From positions 992,001 to 1,056,000 of the forward strand of contig JANJGN010000146.1 in NCBI GenBank assembly GCA_026770705.1: a DNA stretch of 64,000 nucleotides, written 5' to 3'. The notes under the pieces are model-generated. The model was not told where the DNA came from, searched no databases, and saw nothing but the letters and a program-made list of their open reading frames with translations. Below, piece after piece: positions 831-56,475 of the stretch. The translations under genes were made by a program, and so were the position numbers. Positions within the stretch are counted from its first letter, which is position 1. Every line of letters begins with the position of its first letter. Source of the stretch: Isurus oxyrinchus. Lineage: Eukaryota.

Positions 831-1571
831 CAACTTCATTTCCCAACCATTGGCCCATTTAATTCCTGTCCCAAAACACAGACATTAGATCCATTGGTAA
901 ATTCTCTCCTGCTAGCCAGCCTGAATTATGGGTGCTGCCACTCTCTGCTGTTCCTTCGTGTTGGCCAGAATCCAACTCTGATTCAATCTCTAATTTATTT
1001 TCTTCAGTCTAGCGATCCATTTACCTCCCTGTTCTTTATTTCTTTTCGAGAGTCTATTTGTTACTGGGATACAGTCTAAGCATTCATTGTGCCTTTTGGC
1101 AAAGGCAATAATTATCAGGAAGGCACATTTGGACATCCTGATTTGAAATACAATTTCTGAATTCAAATCTGTATTTACTTCTTTACACAACCTTAATGTT
1201 CCACTCAAATGTCTTCTCAAAAATAAATGAACCATTTTCCTTCAGTACAAATCATAGCCCAACATATCGTTGTGACGCAGTTTGCAGCATGTTCATGGGA
1301 TATTGAGCAGGACTAGTAATGGGGTGAGTGATTTTCACTCCGAATTCCATGAATAATTTAGGGAAGTGGCGATGGGACCTGCTGCAGGATTTGGTTTCCT
1401 GCTACAACAGGATGGTGTTTAACTTGAAACACTCCCTCCAGCGTAAAGCTCAAACACTGGTAAAGTAATTAGATTCTGACCTTGGATAACTCTGTTCAAA
1501 TGTCACTCCATCAGTCTGTAACAGTCGCTCTAAGTTAAACAATAACTATCCTGCCTTTCTCTTCCTTACAG

Positions 1572-2473
1572 TGAACATACTGACTATTGTGACCCTGTCT
1601 CGGGGAAGGTGCGGTCTCTCAAAATGTGTTTCCCTTTACCTGGTGTCCATGGCAACCGCGGATCTACTGGTCGTTATCCTTGATCTCATATTCAGGCAAA
1701 TTGCTATTCTTTACTGGGCTCAGTTTCAGTTCATGTGGAGGTTTAAAGTGTGTAATATCCATGCAGTCCTGCTTTATGCAGCCACAGATTGTTCTGTCTG
1801 GTTCACAGTCTCTTTCACCTTTGATAGATTTCTGGCTATTGGTTCCCAGAAGTTGAAAACAAAATATTGCACCCAGCATACGGCGGCTGTGGTTCTCGGA
1901 ACAGTCAGTCTGCTATTCTGTGTGAAGGATACATTCTGGTACTTTATGTATGTAGGTCAATATTCACTTTCCAATGCTCCTTGGTTTTGCACATTAGTGA
2001 CGTATGCTGAATTCTCATCAATGTGGGCAGCAATCGAATGTCTTCATTATATTTTAACACCATTTGCGCCATTTGTTTTGATTTTGATGTTGAACGCTTT
2101 AACTGTCAGATATATTTTAGTGTCGAGCAGAGCCCGTAGGAGACTCCGGGCTCACTGCAGTGGGGAGAGACCCAGGGACCCACAGATGGAGAAACGCAGG
2201 AAATCCATCATTTTACTATTTGCTATATCGGGGAATTTTATCCTGTTGTGGGTAGTTTTTATGATACATTCTGTTTGTAATAGGCTATATATGTTAGATG
2301 TAATTCCTGTATACCTTCCTAGGTTTGTGCAGGAACTGGGATTTATATTTCAGCTCCTGAGTTGTTGCACTAACACGGCCATTTATGCAGTGACCCAGAC
2401 TCAATTCAGAAATGAGCTGAAGAATGTGGTGAAATATCCCTTTTCTGTAATTTTTAAATTTATTAAACAGTGA
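1572..2473 (+). CDS. GPR139/GPR142-like class A GPCR (paralog A), coding exon 2 (TM1 C-half to C-terminus); exon 1 not found in window
   Basis: Open 300-codon frame with rhodopsin-family motifs: MATADLL (TM2), FTFDRF (DRY-type), PWFC (ECL2), LTPFAPF (TM5), NTAIY (TM7). It is preceded by a polypyrimidine tract and acceptor ctcttccttacAG at 1570-1571, in phase 1 like the paralogs, so the GTG 'start' in the ORF track is really the splice junction. Confidence 0.9.
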
Positions 2474-4420: not shown

Positions 4421-5209
4421 TCCGATGCGATAGGTTTGGATTTTTATTGCATTCTTTATTTGAATGGAGCATTGCAGACAAAGCCAGTGTTTATTTCCAT
4501 CCCTCATTTCCCTGGATAAGTTGTTGGTGGGGACGTTCTTGAAGAGAAGTTGTCCATCTGGTTTTGCTTGTCTGCAGCAGTTTGATATAACTCACGGTGT
4601 CCAGACTATTTCAGGACCAGCCACATTGTTGTGAGTCTGGAATCTCGTGGAGCAGCCAGAATGTGGGGAATTCCTGGAGATTACCAGAGATTTCATATTT
4701 AGACCGAAATCATCCCCATTCCTGAAAGGGTTTCAATTCCTGATTTTTTGACGGAAATTCAGCCAGTTGCTGTAACAGGGTTTGAACATTTCTTCAGTCT
4801 TTTTAGCTTATCCGCATTGTGACATTACCAATACACCAGGATCTCCCTGTGGGTGTGGAGGGGGCGGGGGCATAGCAGAGAATGCCTGGGATGATAATTA
4901 CAGCGCTGGACGAACAACAGAAGAAAGTATGGATCCGCCAAAACACTAATTGTCTGTTCTCACTGGGGAACGGTTGTTCAGCTCCTCCAGGAGCTAGAAG
5001 TGTGTTACTCACACATCCATTCTGCTGAAACAATAAGGACACCCAGTTCTCGTTGCACATTCCCCTCTCTCAATTTATAGCCATTCAGATAATAATCTGC
5101 CTTACTGTTTTATCCCCATTATATTGCATCAATAAGCCACTCCCAAATCCCATGTGCAATGACAGCGGTTAAAAAAAATGCAGCCATGAGAGGAGGGAAG
5201 TCCTGAACA

Positions 5210-5456
5210 GTAAAAGCTAAATATTGCGGTTTCTGGAAATCTAAAACTAAAAGAGAAACTGCTGCAAAACCTCAGCATGTCCAACATCACCTGTGGAGAT
5301 AAAGACAGGATTAACGTTTTGAGTCTTTATGACTTTTGTTCAGATAAGAAGACTCTGAAGTAGAATCATGCGGGCTCGAAACGTTAACCCTGTGGTTTTC
5401 TTCACAGATGCTTTATGAACTGTTGAGATTTTCCAACTTTTTCTGTTGTTGATTCA
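5210..5456. mobile_element. Hairpin (inverted-repeat) Penelope-terminus-derived element
   Basis: Left arm ...aaaacctcagcatgtccaacatcacctgtgg...ttaacgtttt mirrors right arm ...gaaacgttaacc...acagatgct...ttttctgttg. Confidence 0.7.
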
Positions 5457-5788
5457 GATGTCCTGACGGGCTTTGTGGTAGAGGAAGGGAGAGAGATTGG
5501 GAGAGAGACAGGGTTTAAGCAAAAACTCCACTCATTCATAAATATCATTCCGAGTCTTGAAGATGTGTAGGTAAGTTTTCTCTGCCTAACCCTTCCTTTA
5601 TTCAACAACATGGAACCTCGCGCCTGAACTCTGAGGAATTGGAGAAAAGTGGCGCAGTTTCAGATGGATGATATTGGAAGATAGCAGGATATGAAGAGAA
5701 ACTTCTGCTGTTATTCCCGTGATCGGGAGGCTCTGAAGTATCGTCTGACGAAACGATGAAGCAGGTAGAACGAAATCCCTGGGGTGAT

Positions 5789-5995
5789 AAATGCAAAATA
5801 CTGCGGATGCTGGAAATCTGAAACAAAAATAAAATTGCTGGAAAAACTCAGCAGGCCTGACAGCATCTGAGGAGAGAGCAACAGAGTTGACCTTTCGAGT
5901 TCAGCTGAAGAAGGGTCATAACGACTCGAGAATCTGTTTCTGCCTCTGCAGATTCTATCAGACCTGCTGATATTTCCAGCGTTTTCTGTTTTCAC
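5789..5995. mobile_element. Hairpin Penelope-terminus-derived element flanked by 12-bp direct repeat CCCTGGGGTGAT
   Basis: Inverted arms, with direct repeats at 5777-5788 and 5996-6007. Confidence 0.78.
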
Positions 5996-7417
5996 CCCTG
6001 GGGTGATGTCCAGCGAGTTCAGGGAGATGGTATCAGTAGGAATGAGCTGATCAGGAATACAGTTCATTATCAAAGCAGAAGGGAGAATGACAGCGCTAAT
6101 GGATTTAACAGAAAAGGTGGAAGTGGAGAGTCGGCCTGTGTTTACTGGAATAAGGACCATGTATATGCTGAACGGAAAGGGGTGTGGCAGGGCGAGGTGC
6201 AGGCTGCGTCTGTTTGTGTATTTAAGAGAAAATGGAAAGCCAGTGTCTCAGTATCCGATCGGCCCCAGGATCTGTGAACAAGCCCCATGTTTATGGTTAC
6301 TTGCAGCATAAAGTTGGACCCCATCTTTGAGTATTTTGACGGTTTTGAACCCCCCCCCCCCCCCACCCCGCACCCCCACCCCCCCCACCCCCGTATGTCC
6401 AATAGACCTAATGCTCTGTAATAATTTGCAGGATTTGTACTTAATAATACAGCAGTGCCAGACACGCCCCAGCCCCTGGAAACATCCCTTGGTTTGTGCT
6501 CCGTATTCTGCCTGTGTTATATATCTAGCCTGTGGCATCCCCACTTCAAAGTGTTTAATCGGACATTGCAGAGGGATCTTGAACAATTTTCTGACCATGA
6601 TTGCACCAACGGTGGGAGTGTTTGATGGGGTATTTTAAAGGAAGTTTTCTGCTCCAATTTCCTGTCCTATATCAGCCTCCGATGAAGCCGAACCCTACAG
6701 TTTAGAATTGCCAGACATGTGTCTGTGAGCGCCCAGAGTGAAGTCACCAAGGTGACTCTCCCTGTTCATTCATTCCACCTCGGGCAATAGCCAGAAACAG
6801 GCAGAGGTAAAGGTCTCCTTACACGGATGGGGCGATGGGTGTAAGCAGAACCCCGACAGGAATGGTAAAACGGGGAGAAATGTGTAACAGGGAAAATGCA
6901 GCGGTGTCGATGGGCCTTGGGGAAAGGAATTCAGCAAAGTCACAGTTAGTTCACTTTTCATTCCAGATTTATTAGCAATCTCAGAGAATATTTCACAGGA
7001 AATTTTATTTTAAAGTTAACAGAAGTGAATATAATGCCTGAGGTCACGTTGGGAACAGAACACATGCGCTCTGATTTGGTAAATTGTATGTACCACTGGA
7101 ACATAGATCAGAAAGAGAAAACTGTGGCTCAAAAGAAAGGGAAGGGGGTAATAACGAATAACGATAAAAACGTTACTTAATTACAATTCAAATCCTAACT
7201 CCAGAGAAATTAGATGCTACAATTACATTACAACCATTTTCATCTCACACCTTTCATACATGAAATCGGAAATACTGCTACAGGTTCGGTTACAGATTCG
7301 GGATCACAAAGTGAAGACATTTCACCTTTAGAATCACCAAGAGAACAGATTTTATATTGGAATAGAGAGACCTGAAAAAACAGCTGAGGAAAAGCTACGA
7401 GGTCCAAATTCAACCGA

Positions 7418-7426: not shown

Positions 7427-7566
7427 CTGTAAAAGAAGGAGACAATAATGAAGCAGATATTTATGATCAGGTGCATTTATGTTATTACTTTTAATTGTTG
7501 AAATGTTTAGAAAATTTTCAGACCGCTTCTGCCAGATTGTAGCATGAGTGGATTGAATCTTCTCAC

Positions 7567-7694
7567 CTTTACCAGAGTGACGGCAATGCTGTCGAAAATG
7601 CTCAGGAAGAACAGGACGATGAATGTTAGAGATTTTGTCCAGATGTTTCCGTTATCGTCCTCATAGCCTTCAATCCAGATGTGGTCTGTGGAAT
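7567..7694 (-). pseudogene. Orphan immunoglobulin heavy-chain membrane exon TM1, copy 1 (IgM-like)
   Basis: 128-nt exon tAG|...|GTgaga encoding (D)STDHIWIEGYEDDNGNIWTKSLTFIVLFFLSIFDSIAVTLVK. It has an acidic spacer plus the mIg TM signature (W-TASTF..LF.LS.FYS..VTL.K), here with TAS>KSL and Y>D. Confidence 0.85.
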
Positions 7695-18139: not shown

Positions 18140-18530
18140 TGTGAGAGTGCTGATCAAAGACACATGCTTTCGAAACTTTTCACCTTGGACTCATCAGGAC
18201 AATTCGCAAGAGTAACAAAAAAATCAAAGGGAACAACATTTAAAACGTCATGAGAAGAGTGTGATGATTGATGGGCGAGTGAAAATGGATTACTCGTGGC
18301 GTTGCAATAGAGAATGCGATAATGACCTGATGAATGGAAGTTAACTGTCAACCGTTGTTTACATTCAAATCAAGTATGTTGACTCTGATTGGTCAAGACA
18401 TTTCATGAGGCCATGAGCCAGAGACAGGCTCTCCCGTCCTTTGTTCAGTTGAAATCGGCGTTACTCTTGCAAATTGTCCTGATAAGTGCAAGAGCATAAG
18501 CTTCTACAACATGTGCATTTTTCTGCTACT
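18140..18530 (-). mobile_element. Penelope-like terminal fragment
   Basis: Reverse similarity to 10950-11180; cctgatgagt...gaaaagtttcga terminus. Confidence 0.55.
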
Positions 18531-19487
18531 TAATCCTTTAGACAAATCCCTTATAAAGTGCAGAGCAATCGGTTTGTTTCAATTAACATCGGAAGACATA
18601 ACAAATGATAATATGTACACAGCATGAATGTCTTGGATTGGATTTTCTGCTGAGATCAATGCTGAGTCCTGAGACTTTCGGTTGGTTGTAAGTCACGACA
18701 CGGGAAATTCCAAATAACAGCAAGTGTGTAATATTTAATCCACGATTGGGATAGGGGGTCATTGTGAAGCGTAACCCACAATTGCATTCTAATTACTGTT
18801 TCTGTATCAGGATGGCAATAAACTTTTATAATGCATTGTGGATGGTGAAGATAATGTTTCCATTAAATTTGTTTTTTTTTTTGTTCTGGCCAGTTGCGAT
18901 TTGTAATCATTTAAAAGGGGAGATTGTTGCCAGTGTAACTTATATTGTATGATGACTCTGCGGATTTCGCCTCCATTGCCAAATGGAAGAGGCGAACAAA
19001 ATGTTTCCTTTATCTGTGTCTGTAATATTCCAGTTCCCTCTTGCTATGTTTATGGGAAAAGAGTTCAAGTGTGAAGCGGAGCCTGCTCAATATAGATCAA
19101 TGGGTGGGGACAGTGTCCGTTTCCATTTCAGGGCGCCATCTACCATCAAGTTCCAAAACATAGGAAGGGGAGATAGCAAGGTTCCTACATTTAATAGTGA
19201 AACTTTGTTGCCAAGTTATACATTTTTGTCGGACACTTTGTCTCCTACATGAACGTCGAGACACCCCGGGACCTTAGGGACAGTTGGGAATGTACCAGGC
19301 CCGCTCTGGAAAGGGGACAAAAAATAAAAACTAACTGGGAAAATGCAGAGTTAGTTATATAATTCTGAATTCACACCTCGGACAGGAGGTAACTCTGTTT
19401 CTGCGAGTTGAAGCCATATGTAACATGTACAGCAACAGCAATGGGTGGGGTATAATGTAGAATTCATGTTGGATTTCACTGCTTTCA

Positions 19488-20395
19488 TCATTTAAAAAAA
19501 TTAACAATCAGACTCAATGGATATTTCACACCATTCTTTAACTCCTCTCTGAATTTACTCTGGGTACCTGCATAAATAAAGGGGTTGATGCAGGAACTTA
19601 AAAGCTGCAGCATAAGTCCACATTCCTCCATTATTATATTTGATTGATTGAAATTCGAGCCATCGAAATAACTAACGCTGGCAATTCGTGCGTAGAGGAA
19701 AGTTTTAAGAGCGAGGAAATATAACAGGATGAAACTTCCCGAGATGGCAAAGAGTAAAACGATGGACTTTCTCCTCTTCTCCATCTCTGGGTCGCTTTGG
19801 TTATCACTCTTGCTGTGGGCTCGCAGTCTTCTGCGGGCTCGACTGGCCACAACAATGTGCCTGACCGTCAGAACATTGAGCAGCAAAATAAGAACGAACG
19901 GGAGACAAGGGGTTAAAACGGCATTTATGCTGTCATATGCCACCCATCCGGGTGATGAATACAATATTGGCTTTAGTTTGCAGTACCAGGGTGTATTGTC
20001 CGTGATAACAGAAGGTTCACAAGCAAAGTACAAGGGTATTCTTTTAGCACAATGCACAACGCAGACAGTTCCTATGACCACAGCTGCTGATTTCTTGGTG
20101 CAATATTTGGTTTTCAGCTGCTGACAACAAATGGCTACAAATCGATCAAAGGTGAAAGCAACTGTCACCCAGACAGAAGAATCCCTGACGCCATATATGA
20201 ACACAAGACTGAGAGCAAAGGCCGGAGTGATGGAGAGGAAACTGAATGGGAGATATGTACCTACAATCCGGTTTAACATCACAGCAAGGATCATGATCAG
20301 GAGATCCGTCACGGCCATGGACATCAGGTAGTATGTGATACATCCAGTGAGACCGCATCTTCTTCGGGACAGGATCACAATTACTGCCAGATTAG
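19488..20395 (-). CDS. GPR139-like GPCR (paralog B), coding exon 2
   Basis: Acceptor ctgtcacAG|CTAATCTGGCA, then an open frame (A)NLAVIVILSRRRCGL...FTFDRFVAIC...NPFIYAGTQSKFR...stop. Joined to exon 1 it gives 325 aa. Confidence 0.93.
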
Positions 20396-21784
20396 CTGTG
20401 ACAGAGGAATATAACCAGGAAGTTTGCGGTGGGGACAAATGAATATAGAACAGAAAATGTTGAGAAACTCACAAATACAGCATTGGTCATGAAAAGAGAG
20501 CAATGTTCCCATTTCAGTCCTATGACTTATATACTCCAGTGGAGAAAGAAAGACTCATTCCAAAATGCAGCAAATTGTCAATACTGTGCTGATTTACAGG
20601 AGGAATGCGGGCTCAGTCCTATAGTGAATATTCAAATTGCTGCATTGTTACTCAGTTAAATGAAAAACAATCAAGTATCCTCTTGCTTGTTGTTTAGAGA
20701 AGAACAGGCTAGGACATTGGAAAAAGAAAGGTACACAATGCTAAATCGACCTAAGAATTTGACAGAAACTGAGTAGATGGCGTTGAATGGAATTAAATAC
20801 AAAGTGTTACTCTTGTGGGCATAATCCAGCAAATGAGAACAGAAAGAATGGAAAAAAAACTCCTTTGGAAGAAAATAAAGGGTAACTAGAACTCCTGAGT
20901 TATGATGACGTGCAGCGAACACAACTGTCCTTCACAGCAGGGTGGAAATCCACACACAGTTTAAGGTTCAGTTGCTGTTAAATTGAAAGACATCAAGCTT
21001 TAGAGTCAAAACGTCCTGGATTAAAGCCCAACTTCAGCTCCCTGAGAATTCTTCGCTGCCCAGGGTGCCAGGTTTCCGCTAAGGTAAGAAACCCTGGGCC
21101 AGTCATTTAATATTCTGCACAGATTTATCAGATAAATACTGTTCATATTCCAGCGAAATGTTAAAAGGAAAAGAATGAGATAATGCATAATACAGATACA
21201 ATTACTCTGTAATAATTCACCCACGGTGACAATGCCGTTGAAACAATAGAAAAACATTTCCTCAGTGGTAACAGCGTTATACATTACGCTTTTTAAACAT
21301 ACCAAGAATAAAATAAAAGAACATCTAAAACCTCGAACGGTGGCGGTAAACAGATGAAAGTGTCCAATTAAACTGACTAAATGTTACTAGCTCAGGGAAG
21401 ATAGTGCATTGTTACTGCTGAACTATTATTCTTGCATTGGGGAGAAACTATGTCCAACGGAAGAAATGACACAGACAAACTTGAGCGACTCGACATGTGA
21501 TGATGACTAATCATGTCAGTAAAAGAAAACAATTGTGTTGCTAAAATGGAGAATTAAATTAAGCATTTCCCTTGAAGTGGAAAAAAGTGACATTGTCTAA
21601 CGTGATAAATTGGGACGATGTCGCCGTAATGTTGATAGATTGTCCTGTTTAATGGGAGAAAGAATATCGTACCATGCAGAAGCAAAGCTCCTAAATACGA
21701 ACAATGATTCACTAAAATGAAAGCAAACCAAAGAGAAGTGATTAAACAATGATTTCAATAGCATAGCAAACCAAAATACTTAAC

Positions 21785-21854
21785 CTGCAATCCCGATCGC
21801 TGCAATGACGGGATAATATATGATGAAAATAAGACCTTTTGGCAATCCGTGCAT
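21785..21854 (-). CDS. GPR139-like GPCR (paralog B), coding exon 1 (MHGLPKGLIFIIYYPVIAAIGIA)
   Basis: 70-nt exon from ATG to a phase-1 donor G|GTTAAG. Homologous to exon 1 of paralogs C and D; intron 1389 nt. Confidence 0.9.
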
Positions 21855-21905
21855 TTCTGTCACCAGCTGCGAGTGTGTTCTGCACCACAACTAAAGACAG
21901 TCACA

Positions 21906-21975
21906 TATATATCTCACGCCAGCCTCCAGGGAGACAATTACACGCTTTGATCTTTTGCAATAATTACGCTAATTG
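21906..21975 (-). promoter_or_regulatory. Proximal promoter of paralog B: TATA-like box, homeodomain/Ebf composite TAATTGTCTCCCTGGAG (21924-21940), extra TAATT sites
   Basis: Motifs read directly from the sequence; spacing to the ATG is identical in paralogs C and D. Confidence 0.7.
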
Positions 21976-22904
21976 AAACAAAGCTGGTCGTGCTGCAGCT
22001 GACAGGAAATTATTTTTGTTTTGACGGAGTAGAAAGCTCTTCAAGGTCACTGACATTGTTCTGGAGGAACATCCTCACAAAGTGCCCTTCTGTCTTCCAC
22101 ATTAACACAAACCTACATTGATGTTTCTTTATCATCTGCCCTTTACCACAACCGTTTCCCGCCGCTATAGTGAAAACAAGAACTCTTCCATTTCTCCCTA
22201 TTCCCCAACTTCGATGTAAAGTCATGGATCTGAACCTCTTACCGTTTTCTCTCTACAGATGCTGAACGGTCTATTGCGTATTTCCAGCATTTTTTGTCTC
22301 ATTCTGTTCGCATTTGGTATGGAAATGTTCAACTCATCACCTTTATTTAGCTTTAAAGTACTCAAATCTTCTGTACGGCTTCTTGCATTGTGGATTATTC
22401 CACATGAGTTAAATTCATTGCAGACATGTCAAATCCAGCTGTAGTGATTGTGCACAGTTGTGTAGCTGTGAACGGCTACGTTTTACTTGATCAGATGCAA
22501 TCAAGCGCTTATGCGTTAATTATGCATAATTATAGAGAGTACGCTTAAACTCCGTAAACGGAGGTCCAGTTGAGCACGATTCTAGGTAATGTGGACCGTT
22601 CCAGTTCGGTATGGTTATGTGATGTGTCGAGGCTCCATTTCTGCCACGTTACATTCATTCATGACGGATAAGGAAGGGTAAGTGTGCACGTCCTTTTCCC
22701 GTAAATCGCTTTCCGTGTCGCCAGGCGAGATTATGCACGGCTGCACTAAGTCTGCAAAGGCCCAGTTCAGTCATCTTGCATTGAATATGGACAGGCCCCA
22801 TTTTAACTACTATCTTCAATGTGCACATGTGAAGCAGTGTTATAAATCTTGCGCAGATAGTTAATTCCTCATGCTTCCTTTCAGTGTCCGGAAAAAAATT
22901 ATCC

Positions 22905-29554: not shown

Positions 29555-32500
29555 GTTCCCAGGCATTCTGTTTCTTGTGTTGACAGGATTATTGGCAATG
29601 ATACGGATGCTGCATAATATAGTTTAATTGTTACTTCAATATTGTAATTTACACCTCAATTTCTTCATTAAACGGGTCATTTATTTTACATGCTTAGATG
29701 TTAATTTTACATTGATATTGATGTAAATTTAACTCACGATGGTTGCGGTGTGTACAAAGCTCATCTAATTTGTTGATGGATCATGCAAATACAGTTGAAT
29801 TGACAGGGAGTGACAGCTGATTCGCAGGATTTGTATGTGGGCCTCAGCTTTTCACCGCATTTAGAAGGATCAAAATGAAGCAACAGTAAGTTTCGTATCC
29901 AAATTGCTGCAGAAAATAAGCCATGTGGTACAGTAAATAGTTTAGAGAAGAACAGGACATTGCGAAGGGTTGTTGTTGGATAACTGAATGAGCAAACTGT
30001 GGGAGAAAGAATACAATTTGTGGAAGGGTGTTTTTCTCTGGTGCTTTATGTTTAACCATTGCACGTCACCATATTTTCTAATTAGCGTGAAACTATAAAT
30101 GATAGTGGTAAGTATTTTCCATGTTTTTGTTCACCCGCCACATGTTTATTGGTGTTCAATTTGCATTGCGTAACTTTAACATCAATCATTGCAGTCGATG
30201 AACTGTTATGAAGACCATTTTTAACTCCGTTGCTGCTGTTAACAACTGCATTCAATTCTCTTTAGAAGTGCACTTTGTTTTCAAGACTGTGCGATACCCT
30301 TTGGAGCCGGAATTAATTATATTCGTAGCCACTTTATTTAGCTCAACTAAATTTTGAAATCTCAGTGTTCGTTCGGAAAGCCCTGGGTTTGTTCCCTACT
30401 TCCGAACTGGTGTCTGTAGCCCAGCTCCATGCCGCTGAGATAGTCCAGCACTTTCTACTCTGTGGTCCTTCTGACGAGGCTGTAAACCGAGGTCTTTCTG
30501 CTTTATCAGTTGAAAATCCTCACTACTGCTGCGAGACCTAATCTCCCACTACAGCAGTCACTGAACTGAAAAAACGCCTTTGATGCGCTTTGTCTTGCTT
30601 CCACAGGGACAAAACCCAAGTTGAATCAATGGTGTTCGCTTAGATTTTCTTTTTCAACGTACATTGGTTCCTTCTGATATTTATTAGGATTTCGTTATTA
30701 CCCATACCTTATTTCCTGTCATTCGATTGGTTTCTTTATTATAGTGATTTAAAGTTTCATAACGTTATTATTTACTGTATTTATAAATGAATAAATGTAT
30801 TGAGCTTTTATCTGTATTTTTATGCCATTTTCAGGTTGTCCTTTTGCCAACTTAATACGTTAGTGAAGATCAATTCCTTCTACTTCTAGATTACATAAAA
30901 TGTACATCAATCGGAAAGTAACAGTTTTGTGTCATTTTATATTCCGACTTCCACTTTATCGGAGACAATATAAATAAAAAATGGACCAGAATTAATGCAT
31001 TGGTAAACTAATCAGTTCCAGCGTTGAATGAAGTATCGATGGCCCATGTGCCATACCATTCTCCCGCCAAACGAACATAGTAGCTGGGAGATTCAGCACT
31101 AATTCTTCCCTTCTCTCTCATCTCTTTCTCTCTCTCTCTCTCTCGCTTGCAGCTAACTTTCTGACTATCGTGATCCGTTCCCGAGGAAGATGTGGTCTTT
31201 CCAGATACGCAGTATCCATGGCGGTGACAGATCTCCATGTTATTATCATTACACTGGTATTAAGCCGGTGTTCGGCTGTTTATTTTCCAGTCAGTTTTCT
31301 GAGCCACTCAAAAGACGAGACAGAAACATTCTAAATCTGAATTCATTGTATTCTACGTATTTTTTTCCGGAATTAGGTCTTTTCAATCTTTGTTTAACCG
31401 TGAAGGCTTGAGGGTCAGATGTTTACTGTCTAGCTTCTACCGGATGTTTGGCTGCCCTCCAACAGTAAAAGATTCAAGATTGCTTAATGTGTTCCCGCGA
31501 TTTCTGTGTCGTGTGTTGACGGACTTTTTGGCAATGATACAAATGCTGCACAATGTAGTTTAATTGTTACTTCATTAATGTCATTAATTCTTGAATTTCT
31601 TAGTTAAACAGGTCGTTTATTGTACTTGCCTAGATGTTAATTTACAGTGATATCGATGTAAATTTAAGTCACGATGGCTGTGGTATATGCAATGTTCATC
31701 TAATTTGTTGATGGATACTGTGAATACAGTTCAACTGACAGGGGGTGACAGCTGATTCGCACGATTTGTATTTGGGTCTCAGCTTTTCACCGCATTTAGG
31801 AGGTTAAAAAATGAGGCAACAGTAAGTTTCGTATCCAAATTGCTGCCGAAAATAAGCCATGTGGCACAGTAAATATTTTGGTTAAGAAGAGGACATTGCG
31901 AAGGGTTGTTGTTGGATAACTGAATGAGCAAACTGTGGGAGAAGGAATATAATTTATGGAAGGGTGTTTTTTGTGGCGCTTTGAGCTTAGCCATTAGGGA
32001 TCAGCATATTTTCCAATTGGCGGGAAACCATAAATATTAGTGGTATGTATTTTTCTATATTTTTGTTTACCCTCCACATGTTTATTCGTAAATTTATCAA
32101 ATAGTTGCTATCGATGAACTGTTATGAAGACTTTTTTTAACTCTGTTGCTACTACTAACTGCTCCATTCAATTCTCCTAAAATGCATTTTGTTGTCAAGG
32201 CTGTGTGATACCCATCGGAGCCAGTATTTATTATGCTCATAGCCACTTTATTTCGGGGATCTAAATTTTGAAATATCAGCGTTCAAGCCCTGGGTTTGAG
32301 CCCTACTCCCGATCTCGAGTTCCTAACCTAGCTGCATACTCCTGAGGAAGGACAGCACTATTTGCTCTGTCGCACATTTAATCAGACTCTAAGTGGAGGT
32401 CTTTCTGCTTCTTCAATTGAAAATCTTCACTAATAATGCGAAAACTAATCTCGCACTACAGCAATCATTGAGCTGCAAAAAAACCGCTCATGTTCTTTGC

Positions 32501-33215
32501 CCTGTTTCCACAGGAACAAAACCCGAATTGAATCAATGGCGTTCGCTCAACTTTATTTCCCATCGTCCCGTGGTTCCCTCATTTATTTATTTGGAATGAG
32601 TTATTATCCATATCTTATTTCCTGTCATTCTATTGCTTTAGGTATTATAGCAGTTCCATAACATTTCATAACGTTATTATTTACCGCATTTTAAACGAGT
32701 AAATGTATTGATTTATTATCTGTACGTTATGCCAACTTCAGGCTGCCCTTTTGCCAATTTAATACGTTAGTCTTGTTCAATTCCTTCTACTTCCAGATTG
32801 CATAAACTTTACAAGAATCAGAAAATAAGTGTTTTGCGTTATTTCATGTTCCAACTTCCAATTTATTTGGGACAATATTAATAAAAAAAAACAGCCGTAC
32901 TACATTGCTAAATTAATCAGTTCCAGCGTTGAATCAAGTATTCATGATGCAAATTCCATACCCTCTCCCACCAAACCGCAGCTGTAGCTGAGAGGTTCGG
33001 CACTAATTCTGTTCTTTTCTCTCTCCTCTCTCTCTCTCTCTCTCTGCCTTACAGCTAACTTTCTAATGATTGTGATCTTTTCCAGAGGAATATGTGGTCT
33101 CTCCTGATGTATCACGCAGTATCTGGTATTCATGGTGGTGACAGATTTCCTTGTCATTAGCATTACCGTGACATTAAGCTCATTTCCAGCTGTTTATTTT
33201 CCAGTCAGTTTTCTG
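29555..33215 (+). repeat. ~1.9-kb direct tandem duplication (29555-31301 and 31490-33215) containing intron sequence and the start of GPCR exon 2
   Basis: Colinear blocks, e.g. ttggcaatgatac...tttaattgttacttca and cagtaagtttcgtatccaaattgctgc, recur ~1935 nt apart. Confidence 0.9.
31153..31301 (+). pseudogene. Truncated GPR139-like exon 2 fragment (TM1-ECL1 only)
   Basis: (CT)n plus ttgcAG acceptor, then ANFLTIVIRSRGRCGLSRYAVSMAVTDL...YFPVSFL. It has an internal deletion and homology ends abruptly at ~31301. Confidence 0.85.
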
Positions 33216-33956
33216 TCCAGCATTCCTCTATGTCGTCTTTGTTGCTTTAAACTTTGCTTCCAAATGTTGTACTCTCTGGTCAACCTTCAAATTCACCTTT
33301 TACTGCTTCTTAACCATTTGTCACCAGGAGCTGGAAATGGAATACTGCACTTAGAAAACAGCAACTGGAAATTTAGGAATGATCTGTGTGCTGTCCTCTT
33401 TGATAAACACCCTTTTTATTTCATAAATGAACCTATTTATATCGTTAACAATGTAACTCGGTGCTCTCTCATAGATGATGCATTTTATATTTCATTTCCA
33501 TGGAGAATGTTTGACTGGCTGGACTGTATTCTAACTCCATGTCTTTCCTTTCTCCTGATTTTGCTGCTCGATATTGAGAATTTCTGAAATATTCTACTGG
33601 CAAGTAGATCCTGCAGCAGACTTTGATCCCAAAGGAATGGAGAGAATCAGAGTGTCTCCGAGATGAAGAGCCACAGCAAGTCTATTGTTGTACTCTTCTC
33701 CATCTCAGGCAGTTTCCTCCAGCTGGTCTTAACGCATATTGTACGTTTCCTGTTTGCACAAAGTATGGGAAATAGCTGATCAGTTCCATTTCCATTGACA
33801 CAAAATATATTCTGCAGCAAAGCTTATAGTTTTTTAACTCCTTAGACCCTGTAGCAATACATTTATATACGCAGGGACCCAGACGAAATACAAAGCGGAG
33901 CTGAAAAGGGCGTTTAAATACTCTTTCAATCTATTGCCAAATGGCACAAACTGTGA
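33055..33956 (+). pseudogene. Full-length but disabled GPR139-like exon 2
   Basis: Acceptor ccttacAG|CTAAC. There is a premature TGA in GLS*CITQYL and several frameshifts and stops, but FPVSFLSSIPLC, LTPCLSFLLILL and YAGTQTKYKAELK remain recognisable. Confidence 0.9.
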
Positions 33957-37175: not shown

Positions 37176-37231
37176 TAATTAATGTAAAAGGCCTTCTCGC
37201 TGTCTTCCTAGAGGCCGACATCATGTATAAA
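37176..37231 (+). promoter_or_regulatory. Proximal promoter of paralog C: TAATTAAT, degenerate Ebf site TGTCTTCCTAGAG (37201-37213), TATAAA (37226-37231)
   Basis: Aligns by eye with the promoters of B and D at the same offsets from the ATG. Confidence 0.6.
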
Positions 37232-37282
37232 TGTAACAGTCTTTCGGTGTAGCACAGAGCACCCTTGGAGCTTATGAGAGAA

Positions 37283-37352
37283 ATGCATGGGATACCAGAA
37301 GGTCTGGTGTTCGCCATTTACTATCCCGTTCTTGCAGCTATCGGTATTCCAG
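37283..37352 (+). CDS. GPR139-like GPCR (paralog C), coding exon 1 (MHGIPEGLVFAIYYPVLAAIGIP)
   Basis: 70-nt exon with phase-1 donor CCAG|GTAAAG. An alternative in-frame ATG lies at 37274. Confidence 0.92.
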
Positions 37353-38113
37353 GTAAAGTATTAGGGTTAGTTACCAGTTACCAGAATCATTTTTCACTCT
37401 ATCACTTCCTTAATTTAGCTGTACTGCTTCTCTATGGTTCACCTCATTAACATGATAATTTGTTTTTTATAATGTATTCCCTTTTTCGCAGTATCTTTAT
37501 CTCCACGTTTAGTGAATTCTTCTTTTAAATGATATTAAACCCTCCCTTTCCTCGCAATATTACTGCTCGTTACTGGTCCATTTTCTCCACTTTAAGGGTA
37601 TCATTTCTCCCCTTCACGAGAACAGTTTCTTCCCATTGCCAGTATACTTACTTCCATTTCAGGGATTACTATGATTGCTTCACCAATGCCGTTTCATGTC
37701 TTTCACTAAAAAGTTTCTCCCACTTAGCAGTGCCGCCTCTCAGTCTAAATGTAATTAGATGTTGTTATTGTCATTATTAATGTGGGCGAAGTATTTAGCA
37801 CACTAATATCACACTGCAATGTAGATCTATTGTATTGTTGGCACTGTCACCATGGATGATTTATCACGCTGTAAATGTAGCTCTATTGTGTTGTTGACAC
37901 AACTATTGAATTACCTCATTTTGCTGTGTGCATATATTGCTCCTTGCGCTGGAATGTGACTAACAGCTATTTCTTAAGTTAGATTTTGTATTCACGAGTT
38001 ATTGGACCGGTCCTCAGTCTTTTGTTTTAGCTGAAATATAGCATATCGGGCAGTGCAACGTTGCTGAAGTCCAACAGTTGGGCATGAACGCTAAACCTTT
38101 TGACTCAAAAGTG

Positions 38114-38681: not shown

Positions 38682-39592
38682 CTAATCTGGCAGTGATTGT
38701 GATACTGATTCGAGGAAGATGCGGTCTCTCCAAATGTATCACTTACTACTTGATGTCCATGGCCATAACGGATCTCCTTGTCGGGATCACAGTTGTGATA
38801 TTAAACCGGATTATAGGTATTTATTTCCCGTTCAGTCTCCTGGCCATCACACCGGTCTTCAGCCTCAGACTTGTGCTAATTTATGGTGTCATCGATTCTT
38901 CTGTCTGGGTAACAGTGGCTTTCACATTTTACCGATTTGTAGCCATTTGCTGCCAGAAGCTGAAAATTAAATATTGCACTGAGAAAATGGCGGCTGCGGT
39001 GATAGGAACTGTCTGTGTACTGAACTGTGTTAAAAGCATCCCCTTGTATTTTATGTGTGAGCCTGCCTTTATAATTGACAATATACCCTGGCAATGCAAC
39101 TCAAAAACAATATTTTATACGTCACCTGCATGGGTCACTTATGAAAGCATAATCGCCGTTTTAACCCTTTGCCTCTCCTTCGTCCTTATTTTACTGCTCA
39201 ATGCTCTGACCATCAGACACATTGTAGCGGCCAGTCGAGCCCGCAGGAGACTCCGGATCCAGAGCAATGGAGAGTATCAAAGTGACCCAGAGATACAGAA
39301 GAGAAGGAAATCCATGGTTTTGCTCTTCTGTATCTCGGGCAGTTTCATCCTGTTACATTTGTTAAGCCTTATAAACTTCCTCTATGTCCGAATTGCGAAT
39401 CTTAGCTATGTGGACTCTACTAATATCAGTGAATCAAATTTTCTTATGGAGGAAAGCGCACGTATGCTTCAACTTCTGAGTTCCTGCGTCAATCCGTTTA
39501 TTTATGCAGGGACCCAGAGTAAATTCAGAGAAGAGTTAAAGAATGGTGTGAAATTCCCATTGAATCTGCTTGTTAAATTATTTAAAAGATGA
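38682..39592 (+). CDS. GPR139-like GPCR (paralog C), coding exon 2
   Basis: Acceptor ctgtcacAG|CTAATCTGGCA and an open 7TM frame with NPFIY; 326 aa when spliced. The DRF motif is changed to YRF. Confidence 0.9.
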
Positions 39593-53234: not shown

Positions 53235-54145
53235 TTATCGTCCAAATAATTTAACAATTTCAAGTAGTGGATATTTCACCCCATTCTTTAACTCTTCTCT
53301 GAATTTACTCTGGGTCCCTGCATAAATAAACGGGTTGATGCAGGAACTCAAAAACTGAAGCATATATGCATTTTCCTCAAGAATGAATGTTGGTAGATTG
53401 ATTTCAGAGCTTGAAAAGTATTTAACATTTCCAATTTGCACACAGAGGAAAGTTATAAAAAGTAACAAGTATAACAGGATGAAACTTCCCGATACACAGA
53501 AGAGTAAAATCATGGACTTTTTCCGCTTCTCCATCTCAGGGTCACGCTGATTGTCTCCATTTCTCCGGGTCTGGAGTCTCCTGCGAGCTCTACTGGCTGC
53601 GAGAATGTGTCTGACTGTCAGGACATTGAGCAGTAAAATCAGAATGAATGGGAGACAAGGGGTTAAAATGTGATGAATGCAGTCATAGGTGATCCATGCA
53701 AGTGAGGTATAAAATATCACTTTTACATCGCAGAACCAGGGTACATTGTCCATTATGTACAAAGATTCGTATATAAAATACTGGAAGGTGTTTTTGACAC
53801 AGCTGATTGCGCAGATTGTCCCTATAACCCATGCCGCCGTTCTTTTGGAACAACATTTTACTTTCAGCTTCTGGCAACAAATGGCCACAAATCGATCAAA
53901 GGTGAAAGCTGTAGTTAACCAGGCAGAGTTGTCTATGGCTGAATATATTAGAGCTTCACGGAGACTGCATACTGGTGTGATTGACAGGAAACTGAATGGG
54001 AAATAAATACCAGTAATCCGGTTCAATATCACAGCGGTTATAATGAGCAGGAGATCTGTCACCGCCAGGGATTGTAAATAATAGGTTATACAGGTGGAGA
54101 TACCGCATTTCACTCGAGAAAGGATCACAATCACCGCCAAGTTAG
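53235..54145 (-). CDS. GPR139-like GPCR (paralog D), coding exon 2
   Basis: (CT)n tract plus ttgcAG|CTAACTTGGCG acceptor; open 7TM frame with TPVC (C3.25), FTFDRF, PWFC and NPFIY; 326 aa when spliced. Confidence 0.93.
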
Positions 54146-55330: not shown

Positions 55331-55745
55331 TGCACCGTGAAAACAGTGTGATAGCTCATCCACAGTTAGACTGTCAGTAACAGAAGATGATCCCATTCAC
55401 AGTGTGTTTAAAGTGTGATAACATAACCACAGTTTGACTGTCAGTAACAGAACACGAACACATTCATACTGTGATTAAAGTGTGATCACTCAACCACAGT
55501 TAGACTGTCAGTAACAGAAGGTGATCACATTCACACCATGATTACAATGTGATAATTCACCTTCAGTAACGATACTGGAAACACAATGGAAAGACATTTA
55601 GACTGTAATGTCACTGTTAAAATACAACTGCAGTAACAGAAGATGATCACACTTGCACTGTGATTACAATGTGATAATTCTCCTTCACCAACGGTGCCAG
55701 TAACAGAATGGAACGGCAATTGCACTGTGATAACAGTGTGAAAAT
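55331..55745. repeat. ~67-bp minisatellite in the intron of paralog D
   Basis: cacagtt[a/t]gactgtcagtaacagaa occurs at 55361, 55428 and 55495, followed by diverged units. Confidence 0.85.
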
Positions 55746-55779
55746 ACACCAGTACTAAATGGTGCAAAACACCGTTGAA

Positions 55780-56160
55780 GACGGTAATATAATACCACTT
55801 ACAATGAAAATTTACACCCTTATAAGGGGGATATTATACCGCTAACAGCAAGAAATTTCACCCTGAACAGGGTAATATTTTACGATTAAAAGTGAGAAAT
55901 TGCACACTTAGCAGGGTAATATGATAGCACTTAAATTGTGAAATTTTGTTTTTAACAAGGTAATATTATGCCACTAACAGCGAAGAATTGCACCTTTAAC
56001 AGCATATTATTAAGCGATTAGCAACGAGAATTTTAGGCAAAGGGAACAAATTATATTGTCAAAATTGAGACATTATACCTATAAAGTGGGGAAAATGTGC
56101 TTTTAGAGGGGTAAAATATACTTGTTAAAAGAGGGAAATTGCTCCATTAATAGGAAGAAT
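55780..56160. repeat. Degenerate ~39-bp tandem repeat
   Basis: Recurrent ggtaatat...gaaatt.cacc.tta units. Confidence 0.65.
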
Positions 56161-56282: not shown

Positions 56283-56352
56283 CTGGAACCCCGAGAGCTG
56301 CAAGGACTGGATAATAAATGGCAGACAGAAGGTCTTTTGGTGATCCGATCAT
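56283..56352 (-). CDS. GPR139-like GPCR (paralog D), coding exon 1 (MIGSPKDLLSAIYYPVLAALGVP)
   Basis: 70-nt exon with phase-1 donor CCAG|GTAAAG; intron 2137 nt. Confidence 0.92.
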
Positions 56353-56403
56353 TTTCAATAAATGTTCTGAACGCCTTCTGCACATCACTGAAAGATTGTC
56401 ACA

Positions 56404-56475
56404 TTTATAACTGATGTGAAGCTCCAGGGAGTTAATTATGTGGTTTGATATCTTGCATTAAATACATTAATTTTA
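56404..56475 (-). promoter_or_regulatory. Proximal promoter of paralog D: TATAAA (56404-56409), homeodomain/Ebf composite TAATTAACTCCCTGGAG (56422-56438), further TAAT sites
   Basis: Motifs read directly from the sequence; positions conserved with B and C. Confidence 0.72.

What the first reader, a model, noticed from the sequence alone, without database searches (positions are those of the whole stretch)
21906..21975. GPR139-like genes carry an olfactory-receptor-style homeodomain + O/E(Ebf) composite promoter
Seen: paralog B has TAATTGTCTCCCTGGAG (21924-21940, minus) and paralog D has TAATTAACTCCCTGGAG (56422-56438, minus). Both end exactly 70 nt before the ATG, have a TATA box at 52 nt and carry extra TAATT/TAAT sites just upstream. 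The motif is better conserved than the spacer around it. Known: TAATT[A/G] is a Lhx2-type homeodomain site and YCCCNNG[G/A]G is an Olf1/Ebf site. This pair defines vertebrate odorant-receptor promoters, and an adjacent Lhx2-Ebf composite marks mouse OR enhancers. Inference: these orphan GPCRs are transcribed in olfactory sensory neurons under OR-type control. Alternative: Ebf1 is also the B-cell master factor, and IgH fragments lie nearby.
Basis: partly seen in the sequence, partly recalled or inferred. Interest (0 to 1): 0.9.

Follow-up and report, generated by a model that had tools for sequence, protein, structure and literature searches.

The report
Conserved promoter of shark receptor genes
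Three neighbouring shark receptor genes of a large, apparently undescribed family keep the same short promoter, which resembles smell-receptor promoters, but nothing yet shows the genes are used in the nose.

Summary
Both 17-mers sit where stated. Each ends at -70 from the ATG of a 23-codon first exon, and a TATA box lies at -57..-51.

A third paralog, C, has the same layout. It has lost the proximal TAATT and carries CTTCCTAGAG.

Between paralogs with dS 0.6-0.9, only exon 2 and a block from about -128 to +86 still align. There are no gaps from -86 to +69. The best-kept promoter blocks are a distal TAATTA, the CTYCCTRGAG element and the TATA box. This is a selected proximal promoter.

The olfactory reading is untested and has weaknesses:
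- The "O/E" site matches TCCCNNGGGA at only 6 of 8 bases, which is chance frequency.
- In mouse, the juxtaposed Lhx2/Ebf composite marks enhancers, not promoters.
- The only sequencing runs that hold the locus look genomic.

The scan had already noted this promoter type on other DNA of the same genome.

The parts
21961..21966 (-). Paralog B distal homeodomain-type site, TAATTA, at -112..-107 from the ATG
   Evidence: It lies in one of the three best-conserved 10-column promoter blocks, GTAATTATTG / GTAATTAATG / GTATTTAATG.
21935..21940 (-). Paralog B proximal homeodomain-type site, TAATTG, at -86..-81
   Evidence: It is shared with D (TAATTA) and lost in C.
21924..21933 (-). Paralog B O/E-like element, CTCCCTGGAG, at -79..-70
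   Evidence: It matches D at 10/10 and C at 8/10 positions. It matches TCCCNNGGGA at 6 of 8 bases.
21905..21911 (-). Paralog B TATA box, TATATAT, at -57..-51
   Evidence: All three paralogs have it at the same position.
21881..21881 (-). Predicted transcription start of B: the A of the conserved CAGA, at -27 and 30 nt after the first T of the TATA box
   Evidence: Inferred from the TATA spacing and the conserved CAGA block. It was not observed in any RNA.
21785..21854 (-). Paralog B exon 1: ATG, 23 codons and 1 further base, followed by a GT donor
19488..20395 (-). Paralog B exon 2, encoding the 7tm_1 receptor body and the stop codon
56433..56438 (-). Paralog D proximal homeodomain-type site, TAATTA, at -86..-81
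56422..56431 (-). Paralog D O/E-like element, CTCCCTGGAG, at -79..-70
56403..56409 (-). Paralog D TATA box, TATAAAT, at -57..-51
56283..56352 (-). Paralog D exon 1
53235..54145 (-). Paralog D exon 2 (7tm_1)
37176..37181 (+). Paralog C distal homeodomain-type site, TAATTA, at -107..-102
37197..37202 (+). Paralog C position homologous to the proximal homeodomain site. It reads TCGCTG, so the site is lost.
37204..37213 (+). Paralog C O/E-like element, CTTCCTAGAG, at -79..-70. It differs from B and D by two transitions.
37226..37232 (+). Paralog C TATA box, TATAAAT, at -57..-51
37283..37352 (+). Paralog C exon 1
38682..39592 (+). Paralog C exon 2 (7tm_1). The DRF motif reads YRF.
1571..2473 (+). 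Paralog A exon 2, a divergent member 47-48% identical to B, C and D. Its exon 1 and promoter lie outside the window.

Best explanation
This is the inherited proximal promoter of a shark-expanded class A receptor family, kept by purifying selection.

Each gene has a TATA box at -57..-51 from the ATG. The predicted start of transcription is near -27, which gives a 5' UTR of about 26 nt.

Above the TATA box, at fixed spacing, lies a small activator module: a CTYCCTRGAG element at -79..-70 and one or two TAATTR homeodomain-type sites at -86..-81 and at about -110.

What is shown: the layout, its identical spacing in three old paralogs, and its conservation where surrounding non-coding DNA has diverged beyond alignment.

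What is inferred: TBP binds the TATA box, a Q50-type homeodomain protein binds TAATTR, and a dimeric factor, possibly of the COE/EBF type, binds the CTYCCTRGAG element. Together they would give cell-type-specific transcription.

Neither the factors nor the tissue is established. An olfactory neuron is the leading candidate, not a result.
For: - Alignment between gene regions: in blastn of gene-oriented regions, B, C and D align only over exon 2 (72-75% nt) and a block of about 200 nt running from about -128 to +86. Introns and farther upstream DNA do not align in B-D or C-D.
- Age of the copies: dS is 0.62 (B-C), 0.75 (C-D) and 0.92 (B-D), so the copies are old.
- Layout: the three-way alignment has no gap from -86 to +69. 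The O/E-like element and the TATA box sit at identical positions in all three genes.
- Where conservation sits: the three promoter blocks with 8 of 10 invariant columns are the distal TAATTA, CTYCCTRGAG and the TATA block. This clustering was reached in 3.3% of 20,000 column shuffles.
- O/E-like 10-mer: 10/10 identical in B-D, where -45..-1 is only 23/45 identical.
- Depth of the split: in the tree, B and C are sisters (SH-aLRT 96). D falls in a different clade that holds genes of several shark orders (SH-aLRT 81-86). The shared promoter therefore probably predates those orders.
- Start codon and upstream spacing: exon 1 peptides of NCBI models in other sharks match the window's exon 1. N-terminal extensions of three models (P0110, P0039, P0075) are colinear with the in-frame translation of -45..-1.
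Against: - Only three promoters could be compared, and they are paralogs in one genome.
- Overall divergence of -86..-1 (K2P 0.40, 0.52, 0.63) is only moderately below dS (0.62, 0.92, 0.75), so the constraint is concentrated in short blocks.
- The shuffle P value of 0.033 is modest.
- No transcript was seen, so the start site and even the promoter status are predictions.
- Paralog C has lost the proximal homeodomain site while keeping an open reading frame.
- Short-tract gene conversion was not formally excluded.
Confidence: 0.75

Rival explanations
1. This is the reader's more specific version of the best explanation. The module is an odorant-receptor-type promoter. An Lhx2/Emx2-type homeodomain factor and Olf/Ebf bind the juxtaposed TAATTR and CTCCCTGGAG sites, and each gene is transcribed in olfactory sensory neurons. 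The family would then be a shark chemoreceptor repertoire.
For: - Homeodomain, O/E and TBP motifs near the start site are the features listed for mouse OR promoters, and both HD and O/E sites are required for the M71 promoter (PMC12547500, section 3.1 read).
- Both changes in paralog C's element are transitions, so its pyrimidine-run / purine-run pattern is kept. Monahan et al. describe that kind of tolerance for Ebf sites inside composites (PMC5608512, passage).
- The family is large, tandemly arrayed and shows species-specific expansion. There are 2164 hits at E<=1e-10. Of the 120 listed, 78 come from one horn shark species, and there are Heterodontus-only clades.
- dN/dS is 0.27-0.32.
- Sharks have very few canonical ORs or TAARs, and in catshark their ORs are not olfactory (PMC11979771 and PMC10116579, passages).
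- The nearest solved relative is GPR139. Its proposed agonists are L-Trp and L-Phe (abstract of PMC5103216 as listed). Amino acids are the odours named for teleost V2R/OlfCs (PMC10116579, passage).
Against: - No expression data were obtained.
- The O/E match is 6 of 8 bases, which occurs at chance frequency: 206 observed against 200 expected.
- TAATTR is not specific to Lhx2 (my own knowledge).
- In mouse the juxtaposed composite marks enhancers and is "not found in promoters".
- Exceptional AT-richness is not seen in B or C, where GC is 0.38-0.44 against a window mean of 0.42.
- C lacks the proximal homeodomain site.
[quoted passage not shown] That is weak evidence, because single receptors are expressed sparsely.
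- The letters and orientation of the mouse composite are only in figures and supplements that I could not read.
Confidence: 0.25
2. The similarity is only leftover homology from tandem duplication, or a short gene-conversion tract, and has no regulatory function.
For: - The three promoters are homologous along about 130 nt.
- Overall divergence of the promoter is not far below dS.
- The composite pattern's two hits amount to one evolutionary event.
Against: - In B-D and C-D no other non-coding DNA aligns at all.
- There are no indels across -86..+69.
- Identity is concentrated in three short blocks next to stretches near 50% identity.
- Exon 1 and the sequences flanking the motif are diverged, so there is no sign of a recent conversion tract.
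Confidence: 0.08
3. The conserved block is transcribed as a 5' UTR from a start farther upstream and acts after transcription, for example through RNA structure or the ATG-stop pair inside the TATA block.
For: - No transcription start was observed.
- ATGTGA or ATGTAA is conserved at -52..-47 in all three genes.
Against: - The consensus RNA fold of -100..+10 is weak: -9.06 kcal/mol over 110 columns, with little covariation.
- The TATA box lies 30 nt before a conserved CAGA, which is the classical core-promoter spacing (the spacing rule is my own knowledge).
- Homology ends near -128.
Confidence: 0.07
4. The O/E-like site is used by EBF1 in B lymphocytes, which would fit the immunoglobulin heavy-chain fragments nearby.
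For: - EBF1 binds TCCCNNGGGA and is a B-cell factor (PMC4312928, passage).
- A heavy-chain membrane-exon relic lies at about 7561-7680.
Against: - The IgH piece is an isolated relic more than 14 kb from the nearest of these promoters. ORF and Pfam checks of the ten intergenic ORFs I submitted found no Ig domain.
- The EBF match is weak.
- A tandem family of more than a hundred genes is not what a B-cell receptor role predicts (inference).
Confidence: 0.03

Closest known systems
Mouse odorant-receptor proximal promoters (homeodomain + O/E + TBP motifs)
   Same: Both have homeodomain-type TAATTR sites, an O/E-like element and a TATA box within about 100 nt of the predicted start. Both sit upstream of intron-poor class A receptor genes that lie in tandem clusters.
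   Different: The O/E match here is only 6 of 8 bases. The sites here are juxtaposed and rigidly spaced. The promoters of B and C are not exceptionally AT-rich. The genes are not ORs. No olfactory expression has been shown.
Greek Island Lhx2/Ebf composite motif of mouse OR enhancers (Monahan et al. 2017, PMC5608512)
   Same: A homeodomain site lies directly next to an Ebf-like pyrimidine-run / purine-run element at fixed spacing.
   Different: The mouse composite marks intergenic enhancers and is depleted in promoters. Here the composite sits 13 nt (-69..-57) upstream of a TATA box in each gene's own promoter. I could not compare letters, orientation or spacing, because these are only in figures and supplements.
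GPR139, a class A orphan receptor (solved structures 7VUG, 9M42)
   Same: GPR139 is the best hit of the family profile among solved structures: E 2.3e-14, 56.5 bits, nearly full length. NCBI's automatic annotation gives most relatives this name.
   Different: GPR139 scores only 8 bits above the prolactin-releasing peptide receptor. A single family sequence hits it at only E 2.5e-4. This family has many copies per genome and is species-expanded. That GPR139 itself is a single conserved brain receptor is my own knowledge plus the abstract of PMC5103216 as listed.

Membership tests
OR-type promoter (vertebrate odorant receptor genes) | Homeodomain motif(s) within a few hundred bp upstream of the start site | tested here: met
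   TAATTR at -86..-81 in B and D. TAATTA at -112..-107 in B and at -107..-102 in C. The feature is taken from PMC12547500, section 3.1.
OR-type promoter (vertebrate odorant receptor genes) | O/E (Olf/Ebf) motif upstream of the start site | tested here: inconclusive
   CTCCCTGGAG holds TCCCTGGAG, which matches TCCCNNGGGA at 6 of 8 bases. Matches at that level are at chance frequency, 206 against 200 expected. The element is nevertheless conserved at an identical position in three paralogs.
OR-type promoter (vertebrate odorant receptor genes) | Exceptionally AT-rich promoter region | tested here: not met
   GC of -130..-58 is 0.42 in B, 0.38 in C and 0.27 in D. GC of -300..-131 is 0.41-0.43. The window mean is 0.417. 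Only D is AT-rich.
OR-type promoter (vertebrate odorant receptor genes) | Sparse expression in olfactory sensory neurons | not testable with these tools
   No holder of the locus is on record as RNA. The four holders cover introns and intergenic DNA as well as exons.
OR-type promoter (vertebrate odorant receptor genes) | Occupancy by, or dependence on, Lhx2/Emx2 and Ebf | not testable with these tools
   This needs ChIP or CUT&Tag, EMSA or reporter mutagenesis.
Greek Island Lhx2/Ebf composite | Juxtaposed Lhx2 and Ebf sites with stereotyped spacing | tested here: inconclusive
   In B and D, TAATTR is 1 nt from CTCCCTGGAG and 2 nt from TCCC. C lacks the homeodomain half.
Greek Island Lhx2/Ebf composite | Located in intergenic enhancers and depleted in promoters | tested here: not met
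   The two sites lie at -86..-70 from the ATG, just above the TATA box. A relaxed scan of the whole window found no other composite.
GPR139 orthologue | Clearly closer to GPR139 than to other class A receptors | tested here: inconclusive
   The profile search puts GPR139 first at 56.5 bits, with PrRP receptor at 48.2 and TRH receptor at 43.2. In the single-sequence search the PrRP receptor scores slightly better.
Class A (rhodopsin-like) GPCR | 7tm_1 domain over the full length | tested here: met
   PF00001 matches all four paralogs at E 1e-16 to 1e-22.

The most novel reading that the evidence does not exclude
The family is the missing large class A olfactory receptor repertoire of sharks and rays. 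Each gene carries an Lhx2/Ebf-type composite inside its own TATA promoter. The mark that mammals use in distant OR enhancers would then be built into each gene, which would be a simpler and possibly older way of choosing a receptor.
Probability: 0.2. Interest if true: 0.9.

Novelty: new variant of a known kind. Interest (0 to 1): 0.5.

Why it matters
[quoted passage not shown] Yet they have only a handful of OR, TAAR and V1R genes, and in catshark these are mostly not expressed in the nose (PMC10116579 and PMC11979771, passages).

A family of receptors with more than a hundred genes, tandemly arrayed and species-expanded, is an obvious candidate to fill that gap. None of my ten literature searches found a paper describing it.

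Its genes share a selected promoter with homeodomain and O/E-like elements. If that promoter proves to be read by the olfactory Lhx2/Ebf pair, it would link receptor choice in sharks and mammals and date that logic to early jawed vertebrates.

If the genes are expressed elsewhere, the promoter is still a compact, rigid and easily testable cell-type-specific module for an unexplored receptor family.

Tried and rejected
1. Expression test. The look-up of sequencing runs listed no holder on record as RNA. The four holders, X1-X4, come from one study. When laid they covered intron and intergenic bins as well as exons. They showed no exon-exon joint and were 95-99% alike, so I take them for genomic DNA. 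Eight small runs guessed as RNA hold next to none of the words. Result: no information on expression.

2. Family-wide and cross-species promoter test.
- The metagenome scan gave 5 loci at only 22-30% identity, which are not this family.
- The viral contigs and genome-contig scans gave none.
- The search of earlier findings by sequence was blank.
- The test was therefore not done. The only cross-species evidence is indirect and covers -45..-1.

3. Mouse composite letters. These are not in the text of PMC5608512, PMC7804114 or PMC11643329, and supplements are closed.

4. Primary OR-promoter papers. Michaloski 2006, Plessy 2012, Clowney 2011 and Vassalli 2011 are not held. I relied on the review PMC12547500.

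5. Consensus strings. The degenerate strings had 0 occurrences in the 25 papers listed, and every listed hit was to TCCCTGGAG in papers on unrelated subjects.

6. Rejected readings.
- RNA-structure reading: the fold is weak.
- Rfam: no hit at gathering score.
- Repeat or transposon origin of the promoter: blastn of the three promoters against the window finds only the three promoters themselves.
- Pfam on the ten intergenic ORFs I submitted: nothing.

7. Spliced model. Exons 1 and 2 were searched separately and were never joined.

Full report
**What is there**

The window holds four intact-looking members of one class A receptor family.
- A: exon 2 at 1571-2473 (+).
- B: exon 2 at 19488-20395 (-).
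- C: exon 2 at 38682-39592 (+).
- D: exon 2 at 53235-54145 (-).

All four match Pfam 7tm_1 and nothing else. Two degraded relics lie at 33057-33942 and 31155-31304.

B, C and D each have a short first coding exon of ATG, 23 codons and one further base, followed by a GT donor. The ATGs are at 21854 (-), 37283 (+) and 56352 (-). A's first exon is off the window.

Most of the 120 listed homologues from other sharks begin with the same kind of peptide, MHGxPKGL.F.IYYP.... That supports the ATG and the two-exon model. I searched the exons separately and never joined them.

**Check of the observation**

Both 17-mers are at the stated coordinates and end at -70 from the ATG. TATA[AT]A[AT] lies at -57..-51, and extra TAAT-type sites lie upstream.

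It has the same TATA position and the same position for the second half of the motif. It reads TCGCTG where B and D have TAATTR, and CTTCCTAGAG where they have CTCCCTGGAG.

A relaxed scan allowing either order and a gap of up to 6 nt finds the same two sites against 0.36 expected. The two hits are homologous, so they are one event, and the pattern was derived from them.

**Is it more than paralogy?**

The copies are old. dS is 0.62 (B-C), 0.75 (C-D) and 0.92 (B-D), with dN/dS 0.27-0.30 among these three and up to 0.32 against A.

In blastn of whole gene regions, the B-D and C-D pairs align only over exon 2 and over a block of about 200 nt running from about -128 to +86. Introns and farther upstream DNA do not align.

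Within the block there is no gap from -86 to +69 in the three-way alignment. The O/E-like element and the TATA box have identical coordinates in all three genes.

Conservation is patchy.
- The three 10-column promoter blocks with 8 of 10 invariant columns are the distal GTAATTAATG, CTYCCTRGAG and the TATA block. This clustering was reached in 3.3% of 20,000 column shuffles.
- The O/E-like 10-mer is 10/10 identical in B-D and 8/10 in the two pairs involving C.
- The spacer at -69..-58 is 5-6 of 12 identical, and -45..-1 is 23/45 identical in B-D.
- Overall K2P for -86..-1 is 0.40, 0.52 and 0.63, only moderately below dS.

I read this as a functional proximal promoter with three or four short constrained elements. 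The caveat is that n = 3 paralogs from one genome.

The tree puts B and C together (SH-aLRT 96). D falls in another clade with genes of several shark orders (SH-aLRT 81-86). The shared promoter therefore probably predates those orders, with moderate support.

The first T of the TATA box lies 30 nt before the A of a conserved CAGA at -27. I therefore predict a start site there (the spacing rule is my own knowledge).

**Is it an odorant-receptor-type promoter?**

The resemblance is real at the level of motif types. A 2025 review lists O/E, homeodomain, MEF2A and TBP motifs, together with strong AT-richness, as the marks of mouse OR promoters. It also reports that both HD and O/E sites are needed for the M71 promoter (PMC12547500, section 3.1 read).

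The specific evidence is thin.
1. EBF binds the palindrome TCCCNNGGGA (PMC4312928 and PMC2394523, passages). The shark element matches 6 of 8 specified bases, and 5 of 8 in C. Matches at the 6-of-8 level occur 206 times in the window against 200 expected.
2. TAATTR is a generic Q50 homeodomain site (my own knowledge).
3. Monahan et al. and the review say the juxtaposed Lhx2/Ebf composite is enriched in enhancers relative to promoters, or "not found in promoters" (PMC5608512 passages; PMC12547500 passage). The shark arrangement therefore resembles the enhancer mark but sits in a promoter.
4. The promoters of B and C are not AT-rich relative to the window.
5. C has lost the proximal homeodomain site. 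C also has D-to-Y in its DRF motif, so it may be decaying, but its frame is open.

Both changes in C's element are transitions that keep the pyrimidine-run / purine-run pattern. Monahan et al. describe that tolerance for Ebf sites in composites. Transitions are also simply the commoner kind of change.

I could not compare letters or spacing with the mouse composite. These are only in figures and supplements.

**Expression**

This could not be tested. No holder of the locus is on record as RNA. The four holders cover introns and flanks as well as exons and show no splice joint.

Catshark papers examined only the four canonical olfactory families (PMC10116579, passages). [quoted passage not shown] This neither tests nor excludes the family. 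Their supplementary expression tables, which I could not open, might settle it.

**What the family is**

There are 2164 database proteins at E<=1e-10, and the best match is 73% identical. The 120 listed come from sharks and one ray, and 78 of them are from Heterodontus francisci. Most carry the automatic name "probable G-protein coupled receptor 139".

A profile of 29 members puts GPR139 first among solved structures. The margin is only 8 bits over the PrRP receptor. A single member hits both at about 1e-4. "GPR139-like" is therefore a loose label.

None of my ten literature searches found a description of this expansion.

**Earlier notes of the scan**

The scan has 142 notes that mention GPR139 in this genome. 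Several describe the same promoter type on other DNA. Two follow-ups reached the same verdict: conserved, with no olfactory evidence. These notes are leads, not independent support. The layout reported just upstream of my window (HD-18-HD-2-O/E-11-TATA) agrees roughly with what I measured here.

**Verdict**

The element is a selected, rigidly spaced proximal promoter (confidence 0.75). Its reading as an Lhx2/Ebf olfactory promoter remains a plausible, untested hypothesis (about 0.25). The B-cell alternative is unlikely, although the IgH membrane-exon relic nearby is real.

Noticed in passing
window 7561-7680 (-): An isolated relic of an immunoglobulin heavy-chain membrane (TM1) exon. Its translation...NIWTKSLTFIVLFFLSIFDSIAVTLVKV, matches the membrane region of human IgM isoform 2 at E=1.1e-4. 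No Ig-domain ORF was found among the ten intergenic ORFs I submitted.
   Followed up: partly
window 33057-33942 (+) and 31155-31304 (+): Two further relics of the same receptor family. One is about 35% identical to B and is split into two tblastn pieces. The other is a 54-residue fragment of the start of exon 2. No exon-1-like peptide or promoter copy was found near either.
   Followed up: partly
window 38682-39592 (+), paralog C: Paralog C reads YRF where the family has DRF, the DRY-equivalent motif. It also has P187L and P190S at conserved columns, yet its reading frame is open. The same gene has lost the proximal homeodomain site in its promoter.
   Followed up: partly
window 21904-21909 (-), 37231-37236 (+), 56401-56406 (-): An ATG followed directly by a stop codon (ATGTGA, or ATGTAA in C) is conserved at -52..-47, overlapping the TATA box, in all three genes. 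It would matter only if transcription started upstream of it.
   Followed up: no
window about 21186-21258 (-) and 37818-37890 (+): A 73-nt stretch of intron 1 is 72.6% identical between B and C, at similar distances from the ATG (about +600 and +540). It is absent from D. It could be leftover homology or an intronic element.
   Followed up: no
window 55345-56002, intron 1 of paralog D: Tandem repeats with units of 67/134, 122 and 44 nt fill much of D's first intron.
   Followed up: no
window 18500-22500: Contigs of runs X1-X4 differ from the window at roughly 1-5% of positions over both coding and non-coding DNA. Summed depth spikes inside exon 2, reaching about 5200-7100 at 20108-20241 in two runs. 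This fits many near-identical family copies or other individuals.
   Followed up: no
proteins P0110, P0039 and P0075 against window -45..-1 of B, C and D: The N-terminal extensions of three NCBI models from other sharks are colinear with the in-frame translation of the 45 nt before the ATG (for example L-S-x-x-C-x-x-x-S-E-x-L-x-x-M). This hints at cross-species conservation of the start-site and 5' UTR region.
   Followed up: partly
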